This document shows positions 31,868 through 58,914 of a stretch of DNA of 64,000 nt, piece after piece. This DNA is from Mytilus edulis. Lineage: Eukaryota. The translations under genes and the position numbers were made by a program. Every line of letters begins with the position of its first letter. Within the stretch, counting starts at the first letter, position 1. The stretch covers positions 61,008,001 through 61,072,000 of the forward strand of contig NC_092351.1 in NCBI RefSeq assembly GCF_963676685.1. The letters run 5' to 3'. Below the pieces are notes generated by a model, which was not told the origin of the DNA, made no database searches, and saw only the letters and a program-made list of their open reading frames with translations.

Positions 31868-32041
31868 TGTAGGACTCAAATCTATGGTGGGTTCCAAATC
31901 TATGGCAGATTCCTAATCTATGGCAAATGTGACGTCATGCCATCCCAAATCTATGGCAGATCTTTTTACAATCCTAATCTATGGCAAGTTTTGTAATTTC
32001 CTAATCTATGGCGGATTTTTGTTGTCTCTAAATCTATGGCA
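31868..32041 (+). repeat. Left TIR (31868-31935) and iteron array
   Basis: AATCTATGG at 31879, 31897, 31915, 31948, 31976, 32003 and 32031. Confidence 0.92.
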
Positions 32042-32549
32042 AATTGTGTGCAGATGGAAAACAATGCAGTACACTTACGACCAATCACTTGTCTTAAACA
32101 AGTAGAAATGTACGACAACGAGATCATGTCTATAAACATTTGTAAAATAAACACTCCATAATGGTCAACCCAAAAAAAATCGTAAATGATGCATTTATAT
32201 ATATCGCAGACATCAAGATTAAAATAATCTTCCCCGTAAAGAATAAACATGTTCTAATCTGTGCATGGTACCTGTTTAACTAAACCAACTATGGAGTCCC
32301 TTAGCAAAAAAGACGGCCATTTGTCATAAAAAATATATAGAACTGATTCCATTTCTAAAAGGGAAAATCCATTGTTTTCCCTTTTTACCTTTGTAAACCA
32401 ATTTTAGATTAATTTAAATCATTAAATGCCTTTTTAATGCTTTATTTCTAACTTAAGTATTAGATTTTTCATATTGGCTCAAGAATTTTAACAAATTTTA
32501 CAATATCTTGTAAATTTATTATGAAATGTTTCCTCCAATATACTATATA

Positions 32550-32871
32550 CTAGTCCATAGACAATTTCTAACAATTCACATAGCATAAAATTTGCTATCT
32601 GGTCGTTAGTCCAAAACTGGAGAAGTGACTTTTAATTGTTGTAAAAACACAACCTCAATAAAAACTTGATAAATACCAAATGTTTAATCCACAAATGTTT
32701 TGAATAGATATTTTGGTCTTTCGACCAAAAATAATGTTTTCAAACGATATTGTATTATTCTGGTCTATAGACCAAATATTCATGTCTTTTCTTATTCATA
32801 AAGAAAAACCAATCAAACAATTAAACCAATCTATAGTATGTTTGATACTCATAAACTGGTCTTTAAACCAA
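32550..32871. promoter_or_regulatory. Left cluster of 16-bp palindromes YTGGTC-N4-RACCAR (putative protein-binding sites)
   Basis: 32713 ttggtc-tttc-gaccaa, 32760 ctggtc-tata-gaccaa, 32856 ctggtc-ttta-aaccaa, 32599 ctggtc-gtta-gtccaa, and a degenerate copy at 32550. Confidence 0.65.
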
Positions 32872-33144
32872 AAAAAAAAAAGAAAAAGGAAAGAAGAAGA
32901 AAATGATTCGGTAGAATTTTTAGTATTTATTATCAAAGACAAAAGATCAATATCAACGAATGAGGCCAGATAATAAAAAAACACAAAACAAATATGACAA
33001 AAAGAAACATCTACGATTCACTGTCAATGTCATTCTAATAGCTTTATGTCTCTCACATGTTATTGATAAGTAACTACTAAGATATTTAGGAGAATAAAAC
33101 AACTTTTATTAATGAAATATTTCAAATGTGTTCGAAACTTGTAA

Positions 33145-36100
33145 TTACAACTGACAACTGTCTAAATAATATATAAGTTGGTTTGAAATAGAAGGATAAA
33201 TATGTGATGTAACAATTCTTTCCCAAAGACTTAGAAATATTTTGAGGTAAAATATCAACACTAAATGCAAATATTCGTCTATCAAAAAATACATGAACAA
33301 TGATTCTAAAAGAAAATATATCGCTAAGTATAATCTATGTTTTTGATAATAACTTTTAGTTTCACAAAAATAAATGTATGAAGAGTAAATTTTTCTGGTA
33401 ATTTCTTTCACATTCTTTTTCCTTTTCTTTCCTTGGCATGTTTTCTCTGAAATAGAAGAAACGATATATTTACATAATTTTGCTTAATGCATATTCATCT
33501 TTTTTTCTTCAGCTTTAAAGGAAGATATCAATATGAGGTTCAAAATGGTGATACTTTCGTGACTATTCACGAAAAAAAAATCAATTCAAATGAAAGAACA
33601 AAATATAAATCACATAATACCTTCTGATTCTTTTCTATTTCCTTTTGGTGTCCTTTTTTGTTGTTTTGGCTGTACTTGCACCTGAAATGTAAGAAATCAT
33701 ATACATTGTAGTTTGTATGAACAAATCACGTTTCTTAATAACATCGAATGCAGATTTTTAAATAATTAATATTTCAGTTAACATATAACAGAAGACGATG
33801 GCGAAAAACAATTGTCACATTTAGTAGCGTGATCGACTTCTTAACATTGCAATGATTTCCACAGAAACAAGTATTAAAATGTGTAGTGGGTCGCTCTAAA
33901 GTTGGAGCGATAGGACTGGTTTTTTTTTTTACTTTGCTCCATGTTGAAGGTTCACTGTCACTTTCGAATGAAAAACGTAGAGCGCTGTTCCTTTGATTTA
34001 AAACATTTCGTGACGTATAGTAATTTTGTGTCCTATATTGATAAACTATGTCTTATCTTTTAGTTTAATGAACTCTGGAAAGCATAATATACGGACAAAC
34101 TTATCACACAGACTTAAAGCATTATTTATATTGTGATGATATACCTTTTATACTTTTTTATTTCAATACAATGAAACTGGAGATTAAATTTATTAATATA
34201 TTAAATGAGAAATATGAAAACTTATATAGATAAGAACTAGACCGACTTACAAAACATTCCTCTCGCTCATTTTCCAATAATCTCCTTAGTTCTGCTGGAA
34301 TGTCTTGATCAACGGATGGTCCTTGTCTTTTCAATTGCTGTTTGGGTAACAAAGGTAAAATCCATTTTGCCTTTGATAGAACTTTTGTCCTTCTGTATGG
34401 CAAACTGTCTCTATTTTTTTCTAGATGTCCAAGAAATCCTCCCCACCACTTTTGCTCTGTATGTTCTATTTGATCGGTGAAAAGACATTGCCACTGTGGT
34501 ATTCTAGATTTGATCTTATTTATATCTATCTTCTCGAACAGAGGATTGATAACTTTTGGTATTCCCTTTGGTAAATTAGGTTTTCCGGAAATGAGTTGAA
34601 TAATGCCATGTTCAGTTTTCCATTCGCTGTCTTGGAAAGCTTTGTACTGCATTTTCACATTATTTGTTGCTAAATCCCGTATAAACTTATAATGCAAAGG
34701 TTTCGTATGCTTACGAATGTCGTTAAGGCTTGATGTTATCCATGAACGAATGTCATAAATAGCCTCTATATCCTTAACGTTCGGAAGCATCTCCTTCAGA
34801 CGAGGCATTGTTTCAGCATCATTTCTACGAAGAGTTTCAGCTATTCGACTAAAAGCGGCATCCACATCTTCGTGTGTATGTCCTACTGGTAAAAATGATA
34901 AATGCACCTGAAAAGAAAATTTCCTATTTGTAACAGTATAATAATAGGTGATTTAAATACGCTAACATGTAATGCTAGACTGAACTTACATTATAAGTGT
35001 GTAAAATGCCAAATTGATTCATAGTATGTCTTGTATTATAAGAGTTGACAATACCCTTCGTATTGAAAGGCAGGAAACTTCAAAATGTATATGAATAAAG
35101 AGCACGTGATATGCCCGTATTATTTTCAAAGAATGAAGTTCTAGTACTTCTAAATATCATGTTATAAATCTATAAAAAAAATAACCTTCAAGGGATGTTA
35201 TACTGATAGATATAAACCAGCCTACAAGGTTTCATGAAATCATTTTGAGTTTTTGTCCGAAAACTGACTAATCCCCCCCTCCTTTTATGACTAAAATTCC
35301 ACAACTCGGAACGATAATTGCCATAATATGCAACATCGATAGTATACTTCAATAAACACTTCACCAAAATATCATGAAAAATGTTCTACGCATTTGACAG
35401 TTATTATACGAAAACACTCGAAAAAGCCCCTTTTAAATGGATAAAATTCCTATAACTTGAACACTTTTAAAATCTATAATTTATAAAAATAGAAAGAAAC
35501 TCAGGTAGACAGATCTATATAAGGGAGCTACCATTTGATTTTAATGGGGGGGGGGGGGAGGGGGGGGGGGGCTAGGATGAAATTTGAAAACAATATGCAG
35601 GACAGTTTTGAGTAAAAAAATGAGACACTTGAAAAAAAAGTCAGGTCGACTATTTAGGTTAATAAAAGTCAGGATAAACTAAAAAAAAAAAGGCAGGACC
35701 AAACAGAGTGAAAAATAAAAAGGCAGGACAGAGATTACAGCTTAAAAAAAAATGCAGGACAACATTTTTCATCCTAAATAGTAATTTCTATTCAATATTA
35801 TAAGTGTCACTGGGAAAACAATTTCTAACTAAAATCGTAGAAGTATTTTACTTCCATGCTAAAACCTTATATTACAGGCATCATAACTTACATGATCAAC
35901 CAAAAGTCCCACAAAAAATTCCCAAAAAGGGGTCTTGTAAATGGATGTTTTACAGAGAGGCGTAGCAATAGCATGTATAAACTGTAATCAATGATACATG
36001 TGTGCAATTTCAGAGGTAATTATATTGATAGGCAATAATTAATGTGTCAATTGATCATATATTTTCATTGTCTGGTAAGATACAATGTATACAATGTATG

Positions 36101-39100
36101 TATATACTGTGCACTGTTCTTTTTATCTACTTGAGATGAATGACCCCATGTGGTTAGCATCTTTATCTGTGGAATTATTGTTGACACAAGATAATTAATC
36201 CTTATTAAGATGTCACAGATTATATGTTAGAGAAGAATTATATACAAATCATTAAATTAATATAGTATATAACAAGAGGCTACGTTTTTCAAGTCCAGTC
36301 TTACATTATAGTCCCTCCTCGTGAAAAAGAAGGGGGAAGACGGCCCTGATCCCGAAGTCCCGGGCTTAAAAACATGAAATCCCTAGGTCCCGAATTTAAA
36401 AAAAAAAAAAAGACCCGACATCCCGAACTTCGGAAAGAGAATTCCCGGATCCCCAAAGCGTAAATCCCGAGCTTAAAAACACCCCGAAAAAGGTCCTGCC
36501 GCCCCTCAAAGAACCATTAAATTTCGAATAAAGCAAATCATTGTATTTATTTCTCGCGTAATGATAACACATAAGAATTCAGTGCTGATGAATTTTAATG
36601 CACTATATTTTCAAGAATTTTAGGGAGCACAGGCCCTTATAATCATCCAATACCCATACCCCCCACGGTTGGATCTGCCTATGCAAATATGCTTAATACT
36701 TCCCACAGTTTTAACCCTTAAACCTAACCGTTTTAAATCTAGAAATAACCACACTTTTTAAATCTAGCAATAGATAATTTCTAAGTGAAGAGGAAGTCCC
36801 AAATAAATTTGCCGAGGGGAGGAAAGAGGAACATATTATTTTATGCGTAAAACTATTTTCACCTTTAAGGGTGCACACGCCCATATGTATATACATGTAC
36901 CTTCACAACCACCTGGTAACTGTTCTTTTAAATGAAGTAACAAGAATCGCAATGATATGTAAATTGCAACTTACCTCATTGAAAATACGTTGGTGAACAA
37001 GGAGTTCACAAAAACCCAATACATATCGATTTTTATTTTCCCGCCAACAATTATCTGCTTGCAAGTACAAAATAGGCGGTAACTTGTTACCCTACAAGGA
37101 CAATAATCATAAAATTACTTCAGTATCGTATCTTACCATGTTTTACCTTATGGACATAGTTTTATAATAAACTTCTTATAATTACTCGTAGTAATCCGTA
37201 AATAGCTCCCTAATAATTCATTTCAACTGTCAAAATTGTCGCAAAAAATGACAAAATCGTAAGGGTTTGTAAATGTGTGTGATGCTTAAGGACTCGTTAG
37301 ATAAATCCGTGGATGTGAAGCGGTGCAGGATACCAGGGATTGTTCATAGATTAACTCGAACCATATACAAAGTCAACTGGGATCAGCCTATTCAGACAAA
37401 GAGAGTTTCTACTTTATAAATGATTAAACGAGATTCTATGAAGAAGGCAATTGGGACCGTTAATGAAAATGCAGTGAGATTATAAAATGATAATCATAAA
37501 GAAATAAAAAAAAAGAATTCAATTTATGGAAAAATCAAGTTTGTTTAAAGAATTAATGAAGATTGTATTCAAAATATTGAATCGCCATCATGATGGAGTA
37601 GAATTACGGATTTACATAAAACTTTTTGGGGGCACATTAACCCGTTTTCAAAGGCAACAAGTTACAATAGCTATTTTTATGCCCCACCTACGATAGTAGA
37701 GGGGCATAATGTTTTCTGGTCTGTGGGTCCGTAAGTCCGTCCGTACGTCTGTTCGTTTGTTCGTGTACTTTGGGCACATTCTTGTTAAATATAACAGGGA
37801 TTACGTTAAATATAACAATAAACCATTCTAAAAGCACAAAACTCTGTCATTCAAATTATATGGCTAATCGGGCGAACTTATTTGTTTTGGGTGTATAGAT
37901 TAATTAGTTTCAACAAATTAAAAAGATATGTAGAAATGTGGACCACAGTAAAACTCGGGGACCAATTCACTACTTAATTGATATGGGTCTGTTATCTTAT
38001 CCTTTACATATACTTTCGATTCAAAAAATATATTACTTTTCATATATTGCCTAGGATAAATTCAACTTTTTATTCTTATGATTTTGTGTGATGTCTTCAT
38101 AGGAGTTCAAATCTAAGAATCAGAGATTCCTTGTGTCATGTTGACGTACGGCGAGACTGTTTGCTGTGAAAAAATACAGGGCGTGTCATATAACAAGTAA
38201 TTGGAACTCTTTTCATCTTATTTCCGATTGTTTTCCAATATATTCTTCAAGCTGGAAATGTGACCAATTCAAGCTGAACGCCCTATCACTTGTATACAAC
38301 CAAGGATGTTGGCATTCGAGGAATAAACCAGTATAGGGAGTGCTCATCACCACCCTTACCCCACCCGAAGTCATACATGTATTGACTGATCATACGTTTA
38401 AATTGTGAAGTGTTTTACTTACCATAAGTTTTGAAATCTGGTGAAGAATTAGCATAAGGATATTCATGGTCAGATTAGAGTCGTGCGCATATTGGTTCCA
38501 GTCGAGAAAGGTGAAAAATTTGTTTTGTCCATGAGCTAAAACTCCGGTGACATGTGTCGTTAGTTGGTCAACTTTATTCACAGCCTGCAATAAAACGTGT
38601 CAATAAGACAACCACATATATGGACCAAAGTAAAAGATATATAAATTCGTTTTAAATTAAATATTTTACTATCCTAAAGAAATATAATAAAACAATGATT
38701 TACAAGGCATACTATAAAGAGGAAGTCTGTAACAAACTGACAATATCAAACGATGTTTACGGAACAAGTTACTGCCATATTCCTGCATTTTTGTAGCTTG
38801 GTACATGAATTTTAATGAGAAAAAAAAATGTACACGTATGAATGTATGGATATGTCATTTAATTTACAGTTGTGGCGTCAATTCGCGAATAATTCCTCTC
38901 AAATTGCCGTCTAAAAACTTGCAATGAGATAAAAGCTAAAGTATGTTAAATTAATTGTACATAAAAAAATCGCTCTAAATGGATAGATTGATTTATTGTT
39001 TGTTGCTCAACCTGTATTGCTCTTTAAAAGAAAACGTATGGTAAAAGATACAAAATAAAATCTGCATAATTCCAAAGTTCCACATCAAACTCTATAATCG

Positions 39101-42100
39101 AAAGAAAAACTATGATGTTCGTATATTTCCGAAGAGGGAATTTTCTGTTATATAAAATACCTAACTTACCTTTGCCATTCGACCAACAAAATGAGGAAGA
39201 TTCGTTTTTGCTACAATGAAAACAAAACTTAAAGTTCATTATATTTCAGTCATCAAAGTTTGTTTTAATAGAATAACATCACACTTCCCATTTGAAATTA
39301 AAAAAATGCGAAAAAATAATTCCTTATTCGGTTCATTAGTTTAAATAAAATAGAAAAGATTTTAACTTCAATGTTTTTTTCTGTTCCTTCCAGATCTTAT
39401 TGGTTTTGCCTTTAAAGTAATCAGATGCTCAAAGGCAATTAGAAATTGGCAAACTGAGTCAATAGTATATCGACTTATATAAAACTGACGCAATGTTAAC
39501 TGACTTTTACAAAAATGACCGACCATTTATCTTACGGTCGACCCATTTTTCTCTAAAAAGTCCAAATATTTATCCGTAGATCATAACTTACACTGATCCA
39601 TTCCATCTATAATTAAGCTTAGATATTGTGATGGGGATGTCTTTGCAGCATTTTTCTTTGTGTAATAGTACTTTCTTTCCAACCTGCAAAAATAGATATT
39701 AAACATATTAAAATATTAGTTTGCTGTTCCGCTTGTGTCTAGCAAGCAAAGTCCACAAATACAACCCGATAAATTGATTGTCAGATTTTTATTTTATTTG
39801 TATTGTTAAATATCAGCTGCTTGATACAATATGGAGCGTTTTGAATTCGTTCGCTGCGCTCACTCGACAAAAAACTTCATATCGTGACCTGCAGCTTACA
39901 ATAAATATGCAGACACCGTCACTGTTACACACAAACCTACACAACAGAACACTATCGATAAATGTTATTGGCTGTAGCTATAGTTAATTTATATTCTTCT
40001 ATGTGTAGTCTAAAGTGCCGCATGTGTAGCAGGATCTGCTTACCCTTCCGGAGCACATGAGATCACCCCTAGTTTTTGGTGGGGTTCGTGTTGTTTATTC
40101 TTTAGTTTTCTATGTTGTGTCATGTGTACTATTGTTTTTCTGTTTGTCTTTTTCATTTTTAGCCATGGTGTTGTCAGTTTGTTTTGGATTTACGAGTTTG
40201 ACTGTCCCTTTGGTGTCTTTCTTCCCTTTTTTATAACTTAAGTTGGATTTCATATTTATTAATTGCATATTTACATACATCTGTCTGCTATTGTGTTCTC
40301 TTCGTTCAGCTCGCAATTTTTCTCTCATCACTGGATCATGCGTGGTCTCTATCTGTCGTTCCAAACTTGTACATACTGTGCATTTCGAAAAGGAATTGGT
40401 CTGAAAGTGTAAATACAATTACATACACATAGCATATACTGACAAATGTTTGAGCTACATTCCAAATACTAATTTGTAACTATTTTAGTTGCAGTCTCAC
40501 ATCTACATATACGTAAGAAGTCTAAATTTATAAGTTAAATCCACAGTAAACGTTTTGCAAATAATCAAATCAGTGGCGGATCCAAAAAAATTATAAGTGG
40601 GGACCCACTGACTGCCCAAGAAGGGGCCAGCTCTGGTCATGATTCAGTGATTCCCTATATAACCAACCAAAGTTTCCAAGAAAAGGGGGCCGCCTAAATT
40701 CGCCTCTGCATATACAATTATTATAGTGAAATTGGTTAATATTAAACTGTCCAAAATATGTCCTGGTTTACAGCATCACCTTTGTTTCGTAATGTACTTA
40801 ATATAATGGAATAATATTATTAGTACCATTTTTATAACGCAAAGGAACGTACGCGTTTCAGACCTTATTTTTATTTTAATATATAAGTTTTAACTTGATT
40901 TTTTAAAGATATGGCCTAACTTGATTTAATTTATACCTTTTTGACTTTAAGATTGGGTAAATATTTTTTCCACATTCCGTAGAAGGCTGATGGCATTAAA
41001 AATTCTTCTGATCTTTCCTTCATATCTTCTTTATATCTTAAATAAATCATGCACTGTCGTGTCCGATAAGGTAGTAATAGTGTATTACAGTCGGGCATCC
41101 TGTCAACGTAATATGTAGCGTATTCCTCCAGCCAATTTATAGCTTGGAGTGATTTTATGCTGGCACAGTAGTGTCTCTCCGATACAGAAAAACGTGCTCC
41201 TCCTATGAACTTTTTTCGATTAGAGTAATAGAAATTTTTGTGAATTCCAAGCATTCTCATCAATGCCTTTGGACAAACTACATGTCCGTTCTGTATACGG
41301 AAGTATGGTGTATACTCCATATTAGTTTCAGAGAACTTTTTTAATAACCACTGGTTGCGACCATTTATTGTCTTTGACCAGAATTCTAATCGCATGTTTT
41401 TAACCTCCACGAAAGAGAATTTCTTCGTACAAACTTTACTACAACAGCGTCTACATGACTTTAAATCCTTCTGAATACTTGCTACTTTTGTATGACGAGC
41501 AAGGAGACGACTTCTCTCTGGATCTACAAAAATGTGATATGATAGTTTTGTTAATAAACTAAAACACTAATTTTTTTTATTTTTATTTTTTCTCTTTGCT
41601 TTTTTTCCCGCTTTTCTTATAGCTATACGATAATTGGATCATTAAATGTAATCAATTAATCTTATGTACATGTATTTGAACATGCAATTGACCGTACTAA
41701 GTGTTTCAACCACATGTGATTTAATCAACTGACAAAAGAAAAGATTAACGAACAACATTTAACATATGAATTGATAAAGAACAATTGACCTTCACAAAAT
41801 ATCTGTATGAATCTTTAGGACCATCAATCAACGTTAGCAATAATGGGCACTCATTGAAACATGATTCTCAAATCATGTCAGATTTTAATAGCTAGGCTGC
41901 TCTTCTTTTAAAACACGAAAACAATACGCAATAAATTAAATGCGTTAGGTGCATTTTTCTAGATTAACACCCAACAAGAACTCACAAAGCCCTGATGTAT
42001 AAAAACGATACAGTTGAATAGCTATTTTATAAAAAATCACTAAAAAATAATAGCCAAAGTCCTTCAAACGCCAACTTTGCCGAAGGTAGTTTTAAACGTT

Positions 42101-46170: not shown

Positions 46171-46353
46171 TATGTTCTAGTTGAAAAGTAAGAAACACAT
46201 GGTTTAAAAATATACATGTAAAAAATGCGCACGTGTCTAGCAGGCGTGGCTTCGCAATGCGATTAAATATAACCAGTGGTGAGACATTGTAAATGTAGCA
46301 GTCCACTAATTTTTTTTCTAAATCGAGATCAAACGTTTATATATTACGCAATA
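46171..46353. promoter_or_regulatory. Putative bidirectional promoter between head-to-head genes
   Basis: 183 bp between the predicted ATGs (46170 on -, 46354 on +); contains CACGTG (46230) and the palindrome TCGCA-A-TGCGA (46252). Confidence 0.5.
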
Positions 46354-49054: not shown

Positions 49055-49085
<31 letters not shown>

Positions 49086-52000
49086 ATATAAATGGAATGT
49101 AATAAAAATGCAGTTATGGAATTATGAGCTGTGTAAAACTTGCAATTGAAATGCTGTATCCGTAAAATATTCAATAATAATGGACAGGCCGTCTATACGG
49201 ACAAAAGGTCTTTTGCCCCCCCCCCCCCCCCCCCCTATTTTTTCCATTGTCATTGTTTCTTTAAAAAATTGAACACGCACCGGCGTGACACGGAGAAAAT
49301 AATGGCAATTTAGACAGCTAAAACTGTTCTTATGACATGACATTGGAATAAAAAAATCATGTGTCACGTTGGCGCACGGAACACCTGCAAAATGAATGAT
49401 AATTACAATATTTGAATTATGAAAGGAAGTTTACCAACTTACCTCACCCAGTTGCTAATATTAGTGGTTTTGAAGTTCACCCAAACAAACATTCAAATCT
49501 CAGGGACTATTCTAACATAAGACGTAGCTTTCCGAAACAGAATTTAAGAAATGAGAAAATAGGGGGGCCAAAAACAGGCCTTATCGTACCAGAATTGCCA
49601 GTTTTCCTGCCACATCGACTTCTTGCAACAGAGATTGGTTTTGTTTCTGTTATAATTAAGAGTTTTTATTTCTATTCACTGAATCATAATATGGGTCATG
49701 TGGTCAATTTTATTCGTTTAACTTAGTTCTAAAGCATAAAACATGGCGCGAACGTTACGATTTTGTTCGAGTATCCGTACAAAAAATGATACAAGAAATT
49801 GGAAGATTTTTTTTTTACAAAACATACATTAAAATTAACATTATAATAATTGTGTTTGCAAAGTTCCATTCTATTGTTGTGACAAATACGAAAAATCTAA
49901 TTCAAGATATTGCCTTTTTCTGTGAATAGATGTAACGGGAGGGGAGGATTTAACCAGGACTGACGACAACGTAAACACATTGGATAATGTGCAAAGAAAA
50001 TCCTCGACGCGTATGTCACCAGTCCACACGAAATTATTGTCACCAATGGACAGTTCTGAAGGTATTTTTTTAATCCTCCTTCTTGCAAACAATTGATCTG
50101 CTGCGTCGTAATAATAGTCATGTGTAATTAAAATAGGTATGCAAGTAATATAAAATATATTCCACTTAATATATATATGATTTTACAATAAAACTGGAAG
50201 AGACCAAGATCAAGTAAAACATGTTAATGAAAATTATTTACTATTTGAATAAAAACCATAATTACGATGCGAAAATGCTATGTATATTTTATTTTTGCAA
50301 CAGATGCATCGACAGTTGAAGATATTCTAGAACGTAGCATGAGTTCTTGCACTGAAGCGCATATGAATAAAGAAGACGTTTCCGATAGCACACCAGTTAC
50401 AGTGGAGCAGTCAATTTTGGACGATTATTTAATAGGTATGATATACCATCTTCATTCTCTTAATAGGTGCTACTCATGGTATGAAGTATAGTGTCTTTTA
50501 ATCTTACTTTTTATAGCTGACCAAATGTTGTATTGGCTTTGCTCATTGTTGAAGGCCGTATTATGGTGACCTATAGTTGTTAATTTGTGTCATTTGGTCT
50601 CTTGTGAGGGGTTGTCTCATTGGTTATCATATCACATCTTCTTTTTTTTATACTTGTCTGTTTTTTTGACATCGCGTAATATATTTTTTTCTCTAGTTGC
50701 TGTTTTTGTTTAATAACCATTTAAAAAAATAATAGTGAATGTGTTGAATTTATGTTAAATGTCCAGTGGAAAATATTATATTATATGTGTCTATCCAACA
50801 AGCCCAGCCAAGACGTTAGGCTTTATTCATTATGTAACACTCCGGAAGAAGAGTCATCATACAAGGACACATTGGAGACATTGGATTGTTATTTTCTCAG
50901 CGGAGAAGCCGCAGGTATTAATTTTTAAGTCGACGATGACGATTACGATGACGGTGACGTCCAGTGGCAAATATGATGGCATATAATGGCGATTGAGTGT
51001 TAATGTTTTATTAATACACTCATATATTGTACTAGATAGCATGCTAAATTGTGTTTTAACCCAGTACTTCTCAGTTCTTTTCTTTTACTACGAAATGTTA
51101 CATGTTTGGCGAAAAAGTAAAAATGGGTAAGTCTTAGTTTTGAACAAACTTGGGGATCGAACACACGATTACAAGGATCGCTTCCAGAAGCAAGACCACC
51201 GAGGAGGTCTTTTCTTATTGCGTATACGGGTACTGGAAATTGTAACCATATCAAAGTTCAGAAATATTACTTTTATTTCAAATGTTCAAACACTTTCTCA
51301 TTAACTGAACAACATATCTTTTTGTATATTTTGAATTGCTGATTTTCCATTCTAAAATGATAGCATTTGTTTACTTTTAGGAGACACATTAAAGGTACAT
51401 ATTCAGAACTTAGTTACACCTGCCGATGATCGCTGTTTTCGAAATCTGGACACGAAACATGCTCACTGTCTAAAACAATTTTATGAAAATCAGCAAATAT
51501 GTCATACAATTCTCATTGGCAACATTGTCAGCGATGTTACTACTAATATAGATAATTTGTCAAAGCTTCTTCAAGAACCTGGCAAAGTAGCAGTTGAAAC
51601 TTTAGGTGGTAATCATACAAGACATGCGCTACAATGTTTATTCGCAAGCCAAACTAAACCTATTAGCATGGTAACATGTCGGTTATACAACAAATTACCA
51701 GACGAGTTGGCGCTACAATTAGGATATGAACACAATGCATCTAATACAATAGGAAAACCGACAAGTTTTGTTGATTTAGTAAAGGTGTTTCGAAAAGAAG
51801 CAACAAAAATAGTAGGAGATACAGATATTAGCTGCATGCAAAATAGTGAAGTAAAGCAATGGAAAGATATTTTATGTACCATTCTAGGGATGGACAGAAA
51901 GGCGGAAGAATTTCATAACAAGTACAAAATTGTTTTAAAAATTGCAAAATCAAAGGATTCAGTATGGAGAAAATTTTTAGAATTCTGTTCCGCTTTCGAA

Positions 52001-55000
52001 ATGAATGAAATTAGAAATACTCCAAGAGGATCTTTAAAGGTTACACAGTTGAGAGATTTTTCAATGCTTTCTAGTGATAACCAAATACATATTTTGGAAG
52101 AAACATTACAGACAAAAGACTGGAGAGTATTTAAGAGAGAAGTAGAAAGGTAAATAAATGCAAATCATGACGTGTGAACTGTAAAACAAATTCACTGCAT
52201 TATATGATTTTCTTAAATGTTGATTTTATATTTGTAAATGAACGATACTTCCTTACTATTAATTGTTCATTTCTTGGTTTGTAAATTATGCTTCAAAAGG
52301 CATTCAGCAAACATTTACGTTATATCGGGAATGTTATTAAAAAAAAAAAGAACCGTGACTTTCGTAATTTAATTCACAGTTTAAGGAAAAATTGGAGCAT
52401 TTCATCGACCTCAGTAAGGAAATTCATTTGTAATATTATGATATTAAAAATAAATTATGAAAAAAGGAATGTACACACCAGTTTTCAAAGATTTATCACC
52501 TATAAAATTCTTCACGAAAACAAAACACAAAAAAAATACCTAATAAACGCTTACACAAGAATAAAGGAAATGTGCAGGCAATGTTATGAGAGACAGCAAC
52601 CAAACGACACATATAAACTAAAACTATCTAGAGACAACACATAGCCTTACAAATATAGGCAGTCGCCATGCAATTTGTCAAGCTCTTAATTTTCCATTAT
52701 ATACATTTTGTGAATAAGTTACACAAAGACTACCAAAGATCTTTCGTTTTATCGAAATCACAAACAAAAAATGTATTTATGAAATGTCAATCGCAAATTC
52801 ATCTCGTCAACCTTTTCGATAGGTCGTGTATTTGGTGGTTGATGTAGACTGCAGCCTTGTAATTTTGTAAACTTATGTTTTTTTTTGGTTTTTTCTTAAT
52901 GTATAAAAAGTGCAATTTCATAGATCGCATCGATATTTTTGGTAATAAGCCCACCTTTCATTTAAAAAAAACCCGGTATATTGAAATATTACAGAAAAAA
53001 GCTCGCACTGTACTTATATCAGTATTGAAGTTACTAACTTTGATGATATCACTGGATTTATTTTGTAGTGTTAGTTCAGATCGAAAGAAAACAACTGGGA
53101 AAACAAAAGCAGATCCGTCAGATGTTGACAGAAAGATTAATGAAAGGTATTTTAGCACTTTAAACGAACATACAGAATAAGTTTCATGCCTCCATTTATG
53201 ACAATTTTTTTCTGAATTTTATCATTTCACGGGATTTCCAAATGTCATTGATTTATATGATTGCGTACTTTAATGTTTGAACATCATTTGGTGCATTTCC
53301 GAACGCGCATATAAATCATAAATCCCTACTGCATGGCTGGCGGCACAAAACTGCCATTTTGATTTGTTTTAGTTTACGATTTTATTCCAAAACTACCGTT
53401 TTGTTAATTACTGTTAAGAGATATTTTTTTTTAAATTTTAATGTTTTAATTTGTTGATGAAATTTTTTAATATTAAATACTAGACTCGCAAATTTCTGTT
53501 GCAAGCTGGTTTAACTGTAATAAGGGAATAGTTCACTTCTTCTTTATGGCAAGCATTTAAAATGTGTCTTTGCCGATTTGAATTTACCCATTAAATAATT
53601 GAGTAATTTTATTATATTTATCTAGTGAGTGTAAAATAAAACAACTGACTACCGAAAGAGAAAAATTGTCAACTACTTCATCAACATTAAAATCAAAGTT
53701 GACAGAAGAACAAAAGAAAACAAAGGACTTCGAGACATTGTTGAATCAAGAAAGGAAAAAATGCAGCGCACTTGAAATTAAATTACAGCAATTGAGGAGA
53801 TCAGAGACTGAACTCAAAGTTGTCTTGGATAAGCAGATTGATAAAAATGAAAAATCTAGTAATCTTCTACAAGTTGAAAAAACAAAATACCAAACCCTGG
53901 AAGAAATGTACAATAAATTGGTAAGTTGAATATTCTGTTTTATAGGGCTGTAATAGCCCTTTAGACAAAACGCTTATTATTTTGTTGATGATATGTGGAA
54001 TAATATTCTGAAACAGACTTACGATAGTTATAAGATCACATTAATGATGCATAAAGATTTGTTCAATTGACCATACAGTCTGCTGATCTTTATCTTGCAT
54101 TACATAATTAATCAAACATATTTATCAGCTTAGAATAAATACGAGAGACAACAAAGAAAAATGGTTTATACAATAAACATCTTGCATGTTATGTACCTGT
54201 TTTAAACATAATAATAAAATAGTGCTTATTTAAATGTTCTCAATACGCAAACTCTGAAAACAATGATGTTTTTACAGGAAGAAGCAAAAGCTTGTTTAGA
54301 AAAGAAAGTTCAGGAATTTGAAGAATCTATTAGATGTCAACATACTGAAAAACACATAAGCCAAGTAAACTACTCTATTGTAAGTTTTATAACCTACGTA
54401 TATATTTACCTAACAATAAAAAAAAATGTCCTTTAATTCTTTGTTAATTGTTTTTCATTTGTCTTTTTGGGGACTTGTATATAGCTGACTATGTGGTATG
54501 AGTTTTGCTAACGATGGTAGGCCGTGCGGTGACCTATAGCTGTTAATTTCTGTGTCATTTGGTATCATTGGCAATCATATCACCCATTCTTTTTTACAAT
54601 AAGACATTTTTTGTTTGTTCAACAAATGATATTAACTTTGTTGATCTGAGTGTACGTAATTAACTTAAAATCGGGAAGATTTGTTGAGTTTCGTACACGT
54701 GTAGTTCTGCTTTCGTTGCAAGTTACAAAATAATTTTGACCCCTGTATTCATAATTTCTCTTTTTTTGTATTTGGTCAGATTCTATTATTCATATGCATT
54801 TCCTTTACAAATGATTGATTTTCATTGGATAATTTTAGTTTTTCCTTTTTATTCTAGTTTATTGTAAATTTTAGTTCCAACGTGTGTATCGTCAAGTTTG
54901 TTGACTATTATAAAATTGAGAAAGGAAATGGTGAATATGTCAAAGCGACAACCACCCGACCATAGAGCAAACAACATTTTATACATTTTATAATGACTAT

Positions 55001-56577
55001 TATGTATATCAGTCTAGTATGTCAAGTGAACGTTAAGTTTTTCAATATAGATTTGTATATTAAGTTTGTTTGCTGTTTATGACTACATATTACTGTAACT
55101 GTCTGTGACGTGCCATTGTCATTAGAACACTTTTCATAAAGTCTCTTAAAAAGATATACATAACATATTTTTATATATTTACAGGTATCTGATAGAGTCT
55201 CGACTCCAAAACAAAAACTGAAAAATGACTGCAGTGACACTTTAAACAAGAAGAAAAGAAGGATGAGTTCAAAGGTAAATAAAAGAATAAAAAAAAGGTG
55301 TACAAACAATTATAACAAAATCTCCGATTACAGAATAATTCTGGCTGTGACAGTATTGGCGTAAATAGACAGTGGGCAAATTTGAACATTCTGGACATTT
55401 CTGTCTCTCCAAGAATGTTTTCTATCCAGAGCAATTTTGAAAAAAAAGTTCTCAAAACTTGTGCTTTACTCCAAATCTTTTTGAGCCATGTGGGCCATAT
55501 TAGTTGGCAGGTGGAATCATTAAATTTTTTAAAACAAAATATTCCAATGATGAGTATTGTCGAATTTAGATAAATCTGGCAATATAATTTCAGAGGGGAA
55601 GATTTGCTAAAAGGTTTACAGATTACGACAATACATGTAGTACGCTTTTTTAACCTACTTTTAGGACGAGTTTAACTGCTAGATAGGTGGAGCCCAGTCG
55701 GCCATGTCTTTAAACCTTGTCAATCTTTCTGGTCTAGACACGAAGAAATACACGGTGTGGTATAAACTCTATCATATGTTTTGTGCAGTTGTAAGATGCT
55801 TATTTTTCATTTATGTTATAGGAATTTGAAGTTGGTACGTCTGTTGAAGCATTTTGGTATCCAGACAAGTGTTGGTACACTGCAAAAATACTAATGAAGA
55901 CAGGAAAAGGTAAGTACTGTTTTATTAAAACAAAATTTGGAGGACAAGTGTTATCAGATATTATATCAGACTGTACAAAATAATTCTGTCGTATAAAGAA
56001 ATTAAAGTGGAAATGTTTGTACTCAATCAACACATGTACAAAATGTATGTAAGTTGAAAAATAATCATATTATTAAAATTCTCCAAATCATGGTAGCAAT
56101 CCTGATGAAGCAATTCAACAAAAAAAGACTTGGCGTTTATTTTTACAGAACAGTACTTGTACTAAACTATCGTTTCGGTATATATTTATTTCAATAAATT
56201 GTTTTACTTATGAACTTTGTTTTAAATCTGTTTGCAAACTGAACGCCATGTATCAAATTTACTATAATATGGATTTTTTCCAAAGTACTACTTTTAGGCG
56301 TTGCATCGTCCTGAACATGTTTGTACTATTTTCCGATGGACGTACTTTTTAAGGCTTGTCACCACTACTTGATTGAAGTCAGTTACTCTTTACTAGTATC
56401 ATTATAGTTTCAACATTCAAGCAAAATTAGACCACAATTTATTATTCATTAATACTCAGATCTTTTAAAAATAAATTGATTTTTTTTACAGGCTATGAAG
56501 TAAAGTACGATCTTGATAAATTTGTCAAAGATCTCCCTTTGAAATATGTAAGAGCAGAAAAGATATCTACAGAATAG
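46354..56577 (+). CDS. ParB/Srx-like domain + coiled-coil + NLS + Tudor-domain protein, 694 aa, 12 exons
   Basis: Exons 46354-46476, 46890-47010, 48651-48734, 49930-50061, 50304-50435, 51381-52149, 53069-53146, 53626-53920, 54278-54364, 55185-55274, 55822-55909, 56492-56577 (2085 nt, open, GT-AG). ParB-like: VHIQNL..FRNLDTKHAHCLKQ..ILIG..VETLGGNHTRHALQ..RLY..LALQLGYEHN. NLS: KKKRR. Tudor: FEVGTSVEAFWYPDKCWYTAKIL..GYEVKYDLD...LKYVR. Confidence 0.82.
47278..47796 (+). mobile_element. HINE/DINE-1-like element with a (TCYG)n microsatellite
   Basis: 5' gcccc..ggggc hairpin, GTCC/GTTC/GTCT microsatellite at 47325-47425, ~170-bp internal tandem, 3' subTIR gtggggca plus a small stem-loop. Confidence 0.7.
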
Positions 56578-57482
56578 ACAGATTTGCTGAAACAAAGGAG
56601 AATGTCCATCATTGGAGGATAACTATGATGCTAGCCAAAGAGGAGAAATATTTGACGAACATGTGTTTTTTTATAATTATTATTGTTGTCCCTATAGAAA
56701 TAATATAAAAAAAAATGTTGTAGATATTGCGTAGTTGTTAATAATTGTCATAGAAATAATCATATAGCTACTCTGCGTAAAGAAGTACAGCAGTCACTGT
56801 GACAAATTTGTGGATTTCTTTATCATTTACTTTAACACCAGAAATTTGCGAAAAAAAAGAAAGCAATAGAATATACCAATAATAAACGTTTAACTTTTGA
56901 TTCATTAAGCTTATTAATTGCATTTTAAGTTGGGTAGTGATGTTTAATGGATAAATGATAGTTAATATCATTGACTTTAAGTTTTCTACCATTTTAGGTG
57001 AAGCGAATTAGTATCTACAACGTATATTTCAATATTAAAGACAGATACACCCGGTTCACAAAATCGTTAGAAAAATAAATCTAATTTCAAATAAAGTGTT
57101 CCAAAGTAATATGCAATTTCACTGTAATCAATAATATAGATCTAAAAACAGAAACATTTATATGAAAATCATCTTTCAATAAATACTTCGACTTGTATGG
57201 TACACGTTTTTCTTTACCAGAAATATGCATCATTTCGGGGCTTTTTATTGTTGAAGATTCGGTAAGGATTTTGCTCTTTTTAAAAGGCCGTATGTCACAG
57301 AAAACCTATAGCTTTTTTATGTCATTTGGTCCCGTGCGGAGAGTATTCTCACTCGCAATCATACCACATCTTCTTATTGAATATTTGAAAACAAAATGTT
57401 ACCGGTTGATTATGTATATATACTGTATGTACCTTTTTAGTCTATGAACAATTGTGATTAGAGTAACATTTTCACGTTGTTC

Positions 57483-57953
57483 TTGGTCTAAGAACCAAAA
57501 AGCAATATACGCATTATATTTTACATTCAATTTTGTTCTTGGTCTAAGAACCAAAAAGTGTTATACGCATTATATTTTACATTCAATTTTGTTCTTGGTC
57601 TAAGAACCAGAAAAATAAGATTGATACTATTTTATTTGATATCATTCATTTAGTTGGTCTTTAGACCAAAATCTGTTGGACAATAGCGCTATCATCTGCA
57701 TGAATGTAACATTTTATTGTTTAAATTAATTAAATATAAACAACTTAGCACTGACGCCTAATGTCTAAAGTGTTTCTGTTTTTGGTCTCAAGACCAGACT
57801 TCTTCAAGCATAAACAGTTTTACGCAAGTCAATACAAATAACAGTTCGTTGTGTTGTTTTGAAATGATGGGTTCATGCATGGATTCAGCCATACCAGATT
57901 TATTCAAATTGAGAACTAACCCGATATTTTTTATATTCTGGTCCAATGACCAA
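57483..57953. promoter_or_regulatory. Right cluster of 16-bp palindromes YTGGTC-N4-RACCAR
   Basis: 57483, 57539 and 57595 (ttggtc-taag-aacca[a/g], 56-bp tandem); 57654 ttggtc-ttta-gaccaa; 57782 ttggtc-tcaa-gaccag; 57938 ctggtc-caat-gaccaa. Confidence 0.7.
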
Positions 57954-58615
57954 AATATGTATACATCGATCTAAAATTATTCCAATTCTGTAAGACAAAA
58001 CTGTTATAATTTATCAAAAAATAATTGGGGAAAATTTCAATGTCTCTGCTAGTGATATATCAATGGTATGGGTGTTATAATTTTCAAAATTATTCAAACT
58101 TTGCAATGAAGTCAGTTATATATGTCGATCTGCATTGGTATTTTAACTAGTACATGCAAGTATAATGGTTGACATGTATCAAAGAGGAAAAGAATGCAAT
58201 TTCCCTTTTAGAAATGGATTCAGTTATAGATAAAAAAAAGTTACAAATACAAAAGTTTGAATTTTCAAATAATGATTTTTAAGCGATATCGTTAATACAT
58301 CTGTTTTAGGGGATGACGATTTAAATCAAATTGGTATCTGGTAATTTCATCTTTTACTTTATAAACATTGTCAGCCGTAGAAAGTAAACTACTACTAAGA
58401 CTCCTATTCTAAAATATGCGCTACTGAAAATAGTGGCGCCCTTATTCATCGCGGGCTTCGGCCGGTACAGCACATGTTGTCCGTCTTCGGGATAATAGGT
58501 CACACCTTCCTTTAAACCATCCTCAAATTGTTGTCAAGGGAAATACCTTCATCTTGAATGGTGTTCAAATCTATGAGTTCCGCCATCGTTGGCGACTATT
58601 CTAAAATATGGCGTT

Positions 58616-58748
58616 ATAGTTTTAAAGGTAATAGGATTATAATTTAGTACGCCAAACGCGCGTTTCGTCTACACAAGACTCATCAGTGGCGCTCATATCA
58701 AACTGATATTTATAAAGCCAAACAAGTACCAAGTTGAAGAGCATTGAG
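58616..58748 (-). repeat. Retrozyme-like fragment with a hammerhead (58649-58692, GUU triplet) inside the transposon right end
   Basis: acgccaaacgcgcgtttcgtctacacaagactcatcagtggcgc. Confidence 0.75.
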
Positions 58749-58784
58749 TTTTATTGTGACCTTATATGTTACTCTTTTCCCATG

Positions 58785-58914
58785 ATCTGCCATAAATTTG
58801 GAGAAAACAAAAATCTGCCATATGTTTGAGTTGTTTGGCGTTTGCAACGTCACATATGCCATAGATTAGGAATCTGCCATAGATTTGGAACCCGCCATAG
58901 ATTTGAGTCCTACA
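58785..58914 (-). repeat. Right TIR (58847-58914) and iteron array
   Basis: Reverse complement tgtaggactcaaatctatggcgggttccaaatctatggcagattcctaatctatggcatatgtgacgt, plus two degenerate iterons further in. Confidence 0.92.

What the first reader, a model, noticed from the sequence alone, without database searches (positions are those of the whole stretch)
31868..58914. 27-kb cut-and-paste transposon pairing a spliced transposase with a ParB-like/Tudor partner gene
Seen: 68-bp TIRs differing at 2 positions lie 27,047 bp apart with TA on each flank. Between them are two divergent intron-rich genes with open frames and three tiers of end-specific motifs (TIR iterons, a 31-bp internal inverted repeat, 16-bp palindrome clusters). 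Known: most animal DDE transposons are a few kb, and two-gene superfamilies such as Harbinger (Myb/SANT partner), CACTA and Kolobok use other partners. Inference: this is a mobile unit with a transposase plus a ParB-like clamp and chromatin reader, an architecture I do not recognise as described.
Basis: partly seen in the sequence, partly recalled or inferred. Interest (0 to 1): 0.95.

Follow-up and report, generated by a model that had tools for sequence, protein, structure and literature searches.

The report
Giant mussel transposon with ParB-Tudor partner

Summary
The 70-nt inverted repeats at 31868 and 58914 are real. They belong to a 1.16-kb MITE family with at least 696 candidate hits in the genome and a 4-bp target duplication, usually TATA.

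The large element is nested inside this MITE. It spans window 32341-58225 (25,885 bp). Its own terminal repeats begin AACTGATTCC, and it is flanked by a 4-bp ATAG duplication. Removing it restores a continuous MITE.

Three other copies in the same Mytilus genome share homology that stops at these inner ends in all three copies on the right and in two on the left. The two with both ends intact have their own 4-bp duplications.

The minus-strand gene encodes a DUF7869 transposase whose D-D-D motifs resemble published Sola1 cores. The plus-strand gene encodes three parts:
- a domain that folds as ParB (pLDDT 96; Z 12.2 to ParB);
- a coiled coil;
- a Tudor-like C-terminus.

Both subterminal regions carry arrays of a 14-bp palindrome, TGGTCnnnnGACCA. 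A family with only about 39% transposase identity keeps the same gene pair, similar termini and a 4-bp duplication, but uses a different palindrome.

ParB-like accessory genes are already reported on giant algal transposons, including a Sola1 element. I therefore rate this a new variant of a known kind, and I found no earlier animal example.

RNA-seq showed almost no expression. The splice models are unconfirmed.

The parts
31868..32340 (.). Left half of the host MITE. It is a different element from the large transposon. It holds the 68-70-nt terminal repeat and seven ATCTATGGC iterons.
   Evidence: 26 of 30 fetched genomic matches are 0.9-1.5-kb elements made of this part plus 58230-58914. 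Their target duplication is 4 bp, mostly TATA.
58230..58914 (.). Right half of the same host MITE.
   Evidence: joining 32340 to 58230 while keeping one ATAG gives a sequence colinear with intact MITE copies. Copy L005 even has ATAG at that site.
32337..32340 (.). Left copy of the ATAG target-site duplication of the large element.
58226..58229 (.). Right copy of the ATAG target-site duplication.
32341..58225 (.). The large element itself: 25,885 bp, Sola1-like, with two genes.
   Evidence: homology with copies on C6 (two) and C14 stops at the right end in all three and at the left end in the two C6 copies (C14 left end disrupted); the left end has only about 6 near-full matches in the genome.
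32341..32400 (+). Left terminal inverted repeat, starting AACTGATTCCATTTCTAAAAGGGAAA.
   Evidence: (pair I4, 67 nt, 79%). The first 26 nt match the right end at 25 of 26 positions. The C3 family terminus AACTGAGTCCA is similar.
58166..58225 (-). Right terminal inverted repeat.
32600..32870 (.). Left subterminal array of the palindrome TGGTCnnnnGACCA, 4 copies.
   Evidence: Five copies are conserved at the same place in C6a, C6b and C14.
57484..57952 (.). Right subterminal array of the same palindrome, 6 copies. Three of them lie in a 56-bp tandem repeat.
   Evidence: Six (C14) or seven (C6a, C6b) copies are conserved in the other copies.
34161..43231 (-). Transposase gene, coding part. Exon blocks seen at about 42275-43231, 40934-41452, 40269-40418, 39590-39715, 39155-39235, 38417-38599, 36963-37091 and 34161-34913. 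Candidate catalytic motifs are IIDGMDQ, QADNCWRENKN and GHTHEDVD.
   Evidence: DUF7869 at E 2.9e-27, 1.1e-15 and 7.1e-17 on three exons; the same blocks are conserved with the C3 family; dN/dS is 0.04-0.14 on the two conserved core exons tested, with no premature stops. One search gives the frames.
51381..52153 (+). Partner gene exon encoding the ParB-like N-terminal domain plus a helical domain. Conserved motifs are GGNHTRxAL and HN.
   Evidence: 124 homologues. One search gives the motifs; pLDDT 96. ParB, Noc, KorB at E 1.6e-5. Z 12.2 to ParB, and Z 11.4 at rmsd 2.4 Å over 96 residues; sulfiredoxin is the only PDB sequence hit.
53067..54385 (+). Partner gene coiled-coil exons at about 53067-53141, 53624-53920 and 54248-54385.
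   Evidence: the public gene model P0104 maps here at 72-88% identity. Searches give only coiled-coil-type weak hits; dN/dS is about 0.4.
55822..56574 (+). Partner gene Tudor-like C-terminal domain, split by an intron. The exons are about 55822-55911 and 56485-56574, and a stop codon follows 56574.
   Evidence: an HMM of the C-termini of homologues from four genera hits exactly these two frames (E 1.2e-9 and 0.084). Searches give sub-threshold Agenet, Tudor_2, Tudor_3, SH3_Hsr9 and DUF4537 hits; one homologue is labelled 'Tudor domain-containing protein'.

Best explanation
Window 32341-58225 is a 25.9-kb autonomous cut-and-paste DNA transposon of the Sola1-like (DUF7869, D-D-D) kind. It inserted, with a 4-bp ATAG duplication, into a pre-existing 1.16-kb MITE.

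The element encodes two divergently oriented, intron-rich genes:
- a transposase, which presumably cuts at the AACTGAnTCC termini and makes 4-bp staggered target joins;
- an accessory protein made of a ParB-like N-terminal domain with a helical DNA-binding-like domain, a coiled coil and a Tudor-like C-terminus.

Both subterminal regions carry arrays of a family-specific 14-20-bp palindrome.

Inferred, not shown: the ParB-like protein, dimerised through its coiled coil, binds these palindromes much as ParB binds parS. It thereby marks or bridges the two ends, which lie 26-35 kb apart. The Tudor-like domain links the complex to methylated chromatin or to a methylated protein partner. I put about 0.4 on the palindromes being the ParB-like protein's sites rather than the transposase's.
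For: Nesting:
- Short family members consist of the outer 470 bp plus the outer 685 bp only.
- Joining the flanks recreates a contiguous MITE.

Mobility:
- Copies on C6 (two) and C14 share 86-97% identity. The homology stops at the right inner repeat in all three and at the left one in the two C6 copies; the C14 left end is disrupted.
- Their duplications are CAAA and ATAG.
- Both genes are present in every copy.

Pair conserved over long times:
- The C3 family is 34.9 kb with ~450-bp terminal repeats. Its terminus is AACTGAGTCCA and its duplication is AAAT.
- It keeps the same divergent pair at about 39% (transposase) and 42% (partner) identity.
- A third pair lies on C12.

Selection: dN/dS is 0.04-0.14 for the transposase core exons and about 0.4 for the partner exons.

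Transposase kind:
- DUF7869 hits.
- The motifs DGMDQ..LP, DNCxxENKN and FLxxGHT parallel the published Sola1-1_AP core FDLEKVL, DNCGGQNRN, FLERGHT (PMC3985635 supplement).
- Sola elements have D-D-D transposases and 4-bp duplications (PMC10741241).

ParB fold. Tudor-like domain.

Palindrome arrays:
- 12 matches against 0.72 expected. They cluster 260-740 bp from each inner end and are conserved in all copies.
- The C3 family has 13 and 15 copies of a different palindrome at the same relative places.

Precedent: ParB-like accessory genes on algal Sola1 and Plavaka elements, the latter next to inverted-repeat arrays.
Against: - No statistical comparison with Repbase or Dfam Sola1 transposases could be run. 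The Sola1 assignment rests on motifs read by eye plus the duplication length.
- RNA-seq from four runs gave at most about 1x depth on partner exons in one run and no junction reads. Expression and splicing are therefore unverified.
- Nothing shows which protein binds the palindromes. Subterminal repeats are transposase sites in many superfamilies.
- The ParB arginine-rich GERRxR box is replaced by GGNHTR, so nucleotide binding is uncertain.
- No Tudor-like exon was detected in the C3 family.
- Copies differ by about 9% in non-coding DNA, so current activity is unproven.
- The homodimer prediction gave no verdict.
Confidence: 0.8

Rival explanations
1. The element and its boundaries are as in the best explanation, but the palindrome arrays are transposase binding sites. 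The ParB-Tudor protein would then have another role, such as tethering to chromatin, choosing targets or countering silencing, and would not act at the ends.
For: Subterminal repeat arrays bound by the transposase are common in hAT, CACTA, P and Mutator elements (established knowledge). The transposase has an N-terminal cysteine-rich and helical region that could bind DNA. The helical half of the partner matches the ParB DNA-binding domain only moderately (Z 5.5 and 3.6).
Against: Palindromes of 14-20 bp suit a symmetric dimer such as ParB on parS. The palindrome sequence changes between families together with the partner, although it changes with the transposase too. In red-algal Plavaka elements, inverted-repeat arrays lie next to the ParB-like gene.
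Confidence: 0.35
2. The ParB-Tudor gene is passively carried host cargo, or a gene on its way to domestication, with no role in the element's own life cycle.
For: Homologues in four Haliotis species fall in one 90%-identity cluster, which looks like a conserved host gene. The partner's dN/dS (about 0.4) is weaker than the transposase's. Other DUF7869 transposase families in the genome show no partner hit.
Against: Three families that diverged to 35-42% identity keep the pair. For C3 the same divergent orientation inside the terminal repeats was seen directly. Partner and transposase have diverged to similar extents. No premature stops were seen in any tested copy.
Confidence: 0.1
3. One reading: a single 27,047-bp transposon bounded by the 68-bp repeats, with a TA duplication.
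For: The outer repeats are 97% alike and flank both genes.
Against: None of the three other fetched copies has the outer repeats within 40-60 kb fetched. In the two copies with intact left ends, homology begins about 470 bp inside the outer left repeat; in all three it ends about 690 bp inside the right one. The outer parts alone form the abundant short family. That family's duplication is 4 bp, and the window copy's flanks ATTA / TATA do not match.
Confidence: 0.03
4. A host gene pair copied by segmental duplication, not a mobile element.
For: Copy number is low, at 4-6, and expression is very low.
Against: Homology breaks are sharp at inverted-repeat ends. Different 4-bp direct repeats flank copies on different chromosomes. 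The precise insertion inside a MITE is confirmed by paralogous empty sites. A transposase domain is present.
Confidence: 0.02

Closest known systems
Sola superfamily, Sola1 group (Bao et al. 2009, as summarised in PMC10741241; core alignment in the PMC3985635 supplement)
   Same: It has 4-bp target duplications and terminal repeats within the reported 11-1124 bp range. The D-D-D type motifs parallel the Sola1 core: D..Q..LP, DNC..(Q/E)N(K/R)N and FL..GHT.
   Different: It is far longer, at 26-35 kb. Bivalve Sola1 consensus sequences average about 5.4 kb (PMC10294476). It also has many introns, a second conserved gene and subterminal palindrome arrays. Sequence similarity to Repbase Sola1 proteins was not scored.
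Sola1-1_Ec32 of the brown alga Ectocarpus (PMC12477816)
   Same: [quoted passage not shown]
   Different: There the ParB-like domain is fused to a DNA methyltransferase. Here it is followed by a coiled coil and a Tudor-like domain, with no enzymatic domain detected. The host is an animal. Direct homology between the two ParB-like genes was not tested.
Plavaka (KDZ) accessory gene PAG3 of red algae (bioRxiv 10.1101/2025.02.11.637652)
   Same: It is a ParB-like N-terminal domain on a giant DNA transposon, with arrays of inverted repeats proposed as its binding sites on the element.
   Different: The transposase superfamily is different (KDZ). ParB is fused to a 2OG-dependent oxygenase. There the arrays lie next to the gene; here they lie in both subterminal regions.
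Bacterial ParB / Noc / KorB CTP-dependent DNA clamps
   Same: The predicted fold of the N-terminal domain matches (Z 9-12), and it is followed by a helical domain. The likely target is a roughly 16-bp palindrome present in arrays.
   Different: The GERRxR box is replaced by GGNHTR. The C-terminal dimerisation domain is replaced by a coiled coil plus a Tudor-like domain. There is no ParA partner. Nucleotide binding is untested.
PIF/Harbinger two-gene transposons (transposase plus Myb/SANT partner)
   Same: It is a cut-and-paste element that needs or keeps a second, DNA-binding protein encoded beside the transposase.
   Different: The transposase fold family is unrelated, the duplication is 3 bp, the partner is Myb-like, and the elements are a few kb long.

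Membership tests
Sola superfamily (Sola1 group) | 4-bp target-site duplication | tested here: met
   ATAG (window), CAAA and ATAG (the two C6 copies) and AAAT (C3 family). The definition comes from PMC10741241.
Sola superfamily (Sola1 group) | D-D-D transposase with the Sola1 core signature | tested here: inconclusive
   The motifs IIDGMDQ..LP, QADNCWRENKN and FLPVGHTHEDVD parallel Sola1-1_AP and an aphid homologue in the published alignment. They differ from the Sola2 (DGCAGQ) and Sola3 (DNASSY) lines. The comparison was by eye only, with no score. The Pfam hit is to DUF7869, which carries no superfamily name.
Sola superfamily (Sola1 group) | Significant sequence similarity to Repbase/Dfam Sola1 transposases | not testable with these tools
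   No Repbase or Dfam library is available here. The reference sequence is present only as text in a supplement, and I did not type it into a tool.
Sola superfamily (Sola1 group) | Terminal inverted repeats at the ends of the mobile unit | tested here: met
   The window family's repeat is 60-67 nt (pair I4). The C3 family's is about 450 bp at 93.5% identity. The termini are similar between the two families.
ParB/Srx-fold N-terminal domain | ParB/sulfiredoxin fold | tested here: met
   The AF2 model has pLDDT 96. Foldseek's top hits are all ParB, Noc, KorB and Spo0J, at E 1.6e-5. VIA gives Z 12.2, and Z 11.4 at rmsd 2.4 Å over 96 residues. The only PDB sequence hit is sulfiredoxin, at E 1.5.
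ParB/Srx-fold N-terminal domain | Conserved nucleotide-binding boxes (GERRxR, ENLQR) and CTP binding | tested here: inconclusive
   The family-wide motifs are GGNHTRxAL and HN. They are closer to the GGCHR motif of sulfiredoxin than to the ParB box II. Binding cannot be tested here.
ParB/Srx-fold N-terminal domain | Pfam ParBc (PF02195) match | tested here: not met
   There was no Pfam hit for the exon at E up to 1 or for homologues. The relationship is at fold level only.
Tudor / Royal family domain | C-terminal domain of about 55 residues recognisable by Tudor-family profiles | tested here: inconclusive
   All hits are below the curated cut-offs, but they are consistent. They are Agenet and MORC2 chromo-like on the window exon, and Tudor_2, Tudor_3, SH3_Hsr9, Agenet and DUF4537 at the C-termini of six homologues. 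One homologue carries the UniRef label 'Tudor domain-containing protein'. Homology of the window exons to those C-termini is shown. No structure was predicted for this part.
   Both the MITE family and the large element make 4-bp duplications.

The most novel reading that the evidence does not exclude
Animal Sola1-like giant transposons encode their own ParB-type system. A ParB-coiled-coil-Tudor protein would load on family-specific parS-like palindrome arrays at both ends. It would bridge ends 26-35 kb apart for synapsis, possibly as a nucleotide-gated clamp, and couple the element to methyl-marked chromatin. This would be a eukaryotic transposon counterpart of bacterial partition complexes. 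It may be shared with algal Sola1 and Plavaka elements, and related genes may have been domesticated in abalone.
Probability: 0.3. Interest if true: 0.85.

Novelty: new variant of a known kind. Interest (0 to 1): 0.66.

Why it matters
ParB-like accessory genes on giant DNA transposons were noticed only recently, and only in algae. There they are fused to DNA-modifying enzymes.

This mussel element shows the same association in an animal, but with a different effector module: a coiled coil plus a Tudor-like reader. It also has arrays of family-specific palindromes at both ends.

That gives a concrete, testable model for two open questions: how very long cut-and-paste elements bring their ends together, and how they interact with chromatin.

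It also offers a compact set of parts for transposition assays: two genes, two ends and a defined palindrome.

Finally, it is a practical warning for annotation. The most conspicuous terminal repeats around a large element can belong to a small element that it landed in.

Tried and rejected
- **Perfect palindromes.** A search for perfect palindromes of 12-20 nt found no clusters. The arrays appeared only with a spaced pattern.
- **RNA-seq.** Four runs with the same species label gave almost no reads on partner exons and no junctions. The only deep bins, 54433-54631 and 54831-55029, come from unrelated interspersed repeats. This shows low expression in those samples and nothing more.
- **ParB-like homodimer prediction.** It gave no verdict (score 0.30 against a mark of 0.32), so it is not evidence either way.
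- **Literature.** A search for 'DUF7869' found nothing. The Bao 2009 and Yuan and Wessler 2011 papers are not held.
- **Tudor-like exon in the C3 family.** None was detected.
- **Spliced proteins.** All searches used single exons by reference.
- **Earlier scan notes.** One unchecked note on this same stretch (s1-834842) called the transposase Sola-like with TGT...ACA termini and a TA target. I agree with the Sola-like part and reject the termini and target.

Full report
**1. The observation**

TA lies on both flanks.

The window is part of a 1.37-Gb genome, at G000 contig C8. Public homologues of the encoded proteins come from Mytilus edulis, M. galloprovincialis, M. coruscus and M. californianus.

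**2. The outer repeats belong to a small, abundant element**

- The first 193 nt of the supposed element have at least 696 candidate matches in the genome, and the 40 that were scored are 92-95% identical.
- Of the 30 loci fetched (one is the window itself), 26 hold a complete element of 0.9-1.5 kb with both repeats.
- These short elements align to only two parts of the 27-kb span: its first ~470 bp and its last ~685 bp.
- Their target duplication is 4 bp. In 23 of 26 copies the two flanking tetranucleotides are identical, and 19 of these are TATA.
- The window copy has ATTA on the left and TATA on the right. 'TA' is therefore only what remains of a decayed 4-bp duplication.
- The ATCTATGGC iterons, 7 on the left and 3-4 on the right, are features of this MITE.

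**3. The large element is nested in that MITE**

Protein searches of the whole genome found both genes together at three further loci, two on C6 and one on C14, at 96-97% amino-acid identity.

- I fetched 40-60 kb around each. None contains the outer repeat.
- Homology with the window starts at 32320-32387 and ends at 58225-58229.
- Alignment of the junctions shows that all copies end with ...GGATTCAGTT on the right and that the window and both C6 copies begin with AACTGATTCC; the C14 left end is disrupted. Their flanks are unrelated.
- The flanking 4-bp direct repeats are ATAG (window), CAAA (C6a) and ATAG (C6b).
The first 26 nt of the two ends agree at 25 positions.
- Joining window 32340 to 58230, keeping one ATAG, gives a sequence colinear with intact MITE copies. 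One of those copies has ATAG at exactly that site.

The mobile unit is therefore 32341-58225, which is 25,885 bp. The central idea survives with new boundaries.

The C14 copy is degraded. Its left end is disrupted. It carries a 13-kb insertion inside the transposase N-terminal exon and a 5-kb insertion elsewhere.

The left end of the large element has only about six near-full matches in the genome.

**4. A second, distant family with the same design**

On C3 a 34.9-kb element has ~450-bp terminal repeats at 93.5% identity. Its termini read AACTGAGTCCAAAATGAAAG, and its duplication is AAAT.

It carries the same two genes in the same divergent orientation. The transposase is ~39% identical and the partner ~42%.

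A third pair lies on C12, at 37% and 35% identity, divergent and 25 kb apart. I could not fetch it.

The gene pairing, the terminus AACTGAnTCC and the 4-bp duplication are therefore old and conserved features (terminus and duplication seen in the window and C3 families).

**5. The transposase**

Three minus-strand exons hit Pfam DUF7869, at E 2.9e-27, 1.1e-15 and 7.1e-17. This family has no assigned function and does not appear in the searchable literature.

Eight exon blocks are conserved with the C3 family, and their frames are open. Candidate catalytic motifs are IIDGMDQ followed by LP, QADNCWRENKN, and FLPVGHTHEDVD.

The published RNase H-like core of Sola1-1_AP and an aphid homologue reads FDLEKVL..TP / FDLQQCLPTP, then YSDNCGGQNRN / YSDCCPGQNKN, then FLERGHT / FMVPGHS (PMC3985635 supplement). 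The Sola2 and Sola3 lines in the same file are clearly different at the second motif.

Sola elements are defined by D-D-D transposases and 4-bp duplications. Their reported terminal repeats range from 11 to 1124 bp and their sizes are mostly 2-9 kb (PMC10741241).

On this basis I call the element Sola1-like.

Between the window copy and the other three copies, dN/dS is 0.04-0.14 on the two conserved core exons tested. It is 0.5-0.8 on the acidic N-terminal exon. There are no premature stops.

**6. The partner gene**

*ParB-like part.*
- Exon 51381-52153 has 124 homologues at E ≤ 0.001 in the representative library.
- Their alignment shows the invariant or near-invariant motifs P..R....H, GGNHTRxA, Y..L and HN.
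- Pfam finds nothing.
- A profile search of PDB sequences finds only sulfiredoxin, at E 1.5, with a sensible alignment.
- The AlphaFold model built on the alignment has mean pLDDT 96.
- Foldseek's best matches are all ParB, Noc, KorB, Spo0J, PadC and pNOB8 ParB, from E 1.6e-5 at probability 1.0.
- The second-look aligner gives Z 12.2 to Myxococcus ParB with CTPγS. It gives Z 11.4 at rmsd 2.4 Å over 96 residues to the Caulobacter ParB N-domain, and Z 10.8 over 186 residues to KorB.
- The helical second half aligns to the ParB DNA-binding domain more weakly, at Z 5.5 to Spo0J-parS.
- The ParB-like reading is supported at fold level. Whether the domain binds CTP is open, because the arginine-rich box is replaced by GGNHTR.

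*Coiled coil.* A public gene model, P0104, maps onto exons at 53067-53141, 53624-53920, 54248-54385 and 56485-56571. The middle exons are coiled coil.

*Tudor-like part.*
- The C-terminal domain is split between 55822-~55911 and 56485-56574.
- I built an HMM from the last 62 residues of homologues from Haliotis, Mercenaria, M. galloprovincialis and M. californianus. Among all six-frame segments of the window and the C3 locus, its two best hits are these two frames, at E 1.2e-9 and 0.084.
- Those C-termini, and the window exon, give consistent but sub-threshold hits to Agenet, Tudor_2, Tudor_3, Hsr-9 Tudor, DUF4537 and the MORC2 chromo-like domain.
- One homologue is labelled 'Tudor domain-containing protein' by UniRef.
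- I rate the Tudor-like reading as probable, not proven. No such exon was found in the C3 family.

*Selection and expression.*
- dN/dS for the partner exons is about 0.4.
- RNA-seq from four runs showed about 1x depth on partner exons in one run only, and no junction reads.
- The splice model therefore rests on public annotation and on open, conserved frames.

**7. Palindrome arrays**

- TGGTCnnnnGACCA, allowing one mismatch, occurs 12 times in the window against 0.72 expected. None of 100 shuffles reached 12.
- Four copies lie at 32600-32870 and six at 57484-57952. These are 260-740 bp from the inner ends.
- Three of the right-hand copies sit in a 56-bp tandem repeat.
- The same arrays are conserved in the other copies, 5 on the left and 6-7 on the right.
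- The C3 family has no such motif. Instead it has 13 and 15 copies of CA(A/G)AATAAATTTATT(T/C)TG in its two subterminal regions, with only two more copies in the 50 kb examined.
- Arrays of family-specific palindromes placed symmetrically at both ends are therefore part of the design.

**8. Mechanism**

*Shown.* This is a nested, mobile, two-gene element with 4-bp duplications, conserved termini, conserved pairing and purifying selection.

*Inferred.* The transposase cuts and joins. A dimeric protein binds the palindromes.

My preferred reading, at about 0.4, is that this dimeric protein is the ParB-like partner acting on parS-like sites. It would help pair or mark ends that lie 26-35 kb apart, with the Tudor-like domain giving a link to methylated chromatin or to a methylated protein.

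The main rival, at about 0.35, is that the transposase binds the arrays and the partner has another role.

A homodimer prediction gave no verdict.

**9. What is known**

- A 21.5-kb Sola1 element of Ectocarpus carries an opposite-strand gene for a ParB-like domain fused to a DNA methyltransferase. The authors mention similar proteins on green and red algal transposons (PMC12477816).
- Red-algal Plavaka elements carry PAG3, a ParB-like domain fused to a 2OG oxygenase, next to inverted-repeat arrays (bioRxiv 10.1101/2025.02.11.637652).
- The Ectocarpus paper also calls a Gypsy element the first TE with a Tudor domain.
- I found no report of a ParB-like accessory gene on an animal transposon, nor of a ParB-coiled-coil-Tudor protein.
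- A survey of bivalve transposons lists Sola1 consensus sequences of ~5.4 kb on average (PMC10294476). The 26-35-kb two-gene forms seem to have been missed.

**10. Verdict**

- I class this as a new variant of a recently recognised kind, and as the first animal example I could find.
- It has an unusually clear set of candidate cis sites.

**11. Limits**

Noticed in passing
window 31868-32340 and 58230-58914; loci L002-L030: The host MITE family (termini TGTAGGACTC, ATCTATGGC iterons, ~1 kb, at least 696 candidate hits) also makes 4-bp duplications, mostly TATA. Its autonomous partner is unknown. Other DUF7869 transposase families in this genome, for example the ~17 hits at 45-48% identity, would be candidates.
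   Followed up: partly
proteins P0012, P0134, P0135, P0136: ParB-coiled-coil-Tudor homologues from four Haliotis species (H. rubra, H. cracherodii, H. rufescens, H. asinina) fall in a single 90%-identity cluster of 543-548 aa. This looks like a conserved, possibly domesticated host gene derived from this transposon protein family.
   Followed up: no
window 49039-49250: A run of about 20-30 G and a run of about 20 C, some 140 nt apart, form an inverted repeat inside the element (pairs I7 and I11). Its nature is unknown. It may be a small nested insertion.
   Followed up: no
window 44691-44951, 46031-46591, 46841-47211, 50371-50491: These islands are 95-99% identical between copies, against about 91% for the element overall. 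They lie between the two genes and have no assigned function. They may be 5' exons and a shared bidirectional promoter, or a further small gene.
   Followed up: partly
window 43369-43520, 50525-50664, 54480-54596, 57325-57378: Fragments of a common interspersed repeat lie inside the element's introns and intergenic DNA. They account for the only deep RNA-seq bin pile-ups, at 54433-54631 and 54831-55029.
   Followed up: partly
window 22188-24573, minus strand: There is a BEL/Pao-type LTR retrotransposon remnant here, with Peptidase_A17 at E 6.2e-21 and RVT_1 at E 4.5e-11. It coincides with the GC-richer stretch at 22-26 kb.
   Followed up: partly
window 4390-6108, minus strand: A 572-aa open frame has weak B-box zinc-finger hits, which suggests a TRIM-like protein.
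   Followed up: no
G000 contigs C2264, C933, C1460: Unplaced contigs carry further copies of the C3-type family. On C2264 the transposase and partner hits are tail-to-tail and 24 kb apart, which suggests two adjacent elements or an assembly duplicate.
   Followed up: no
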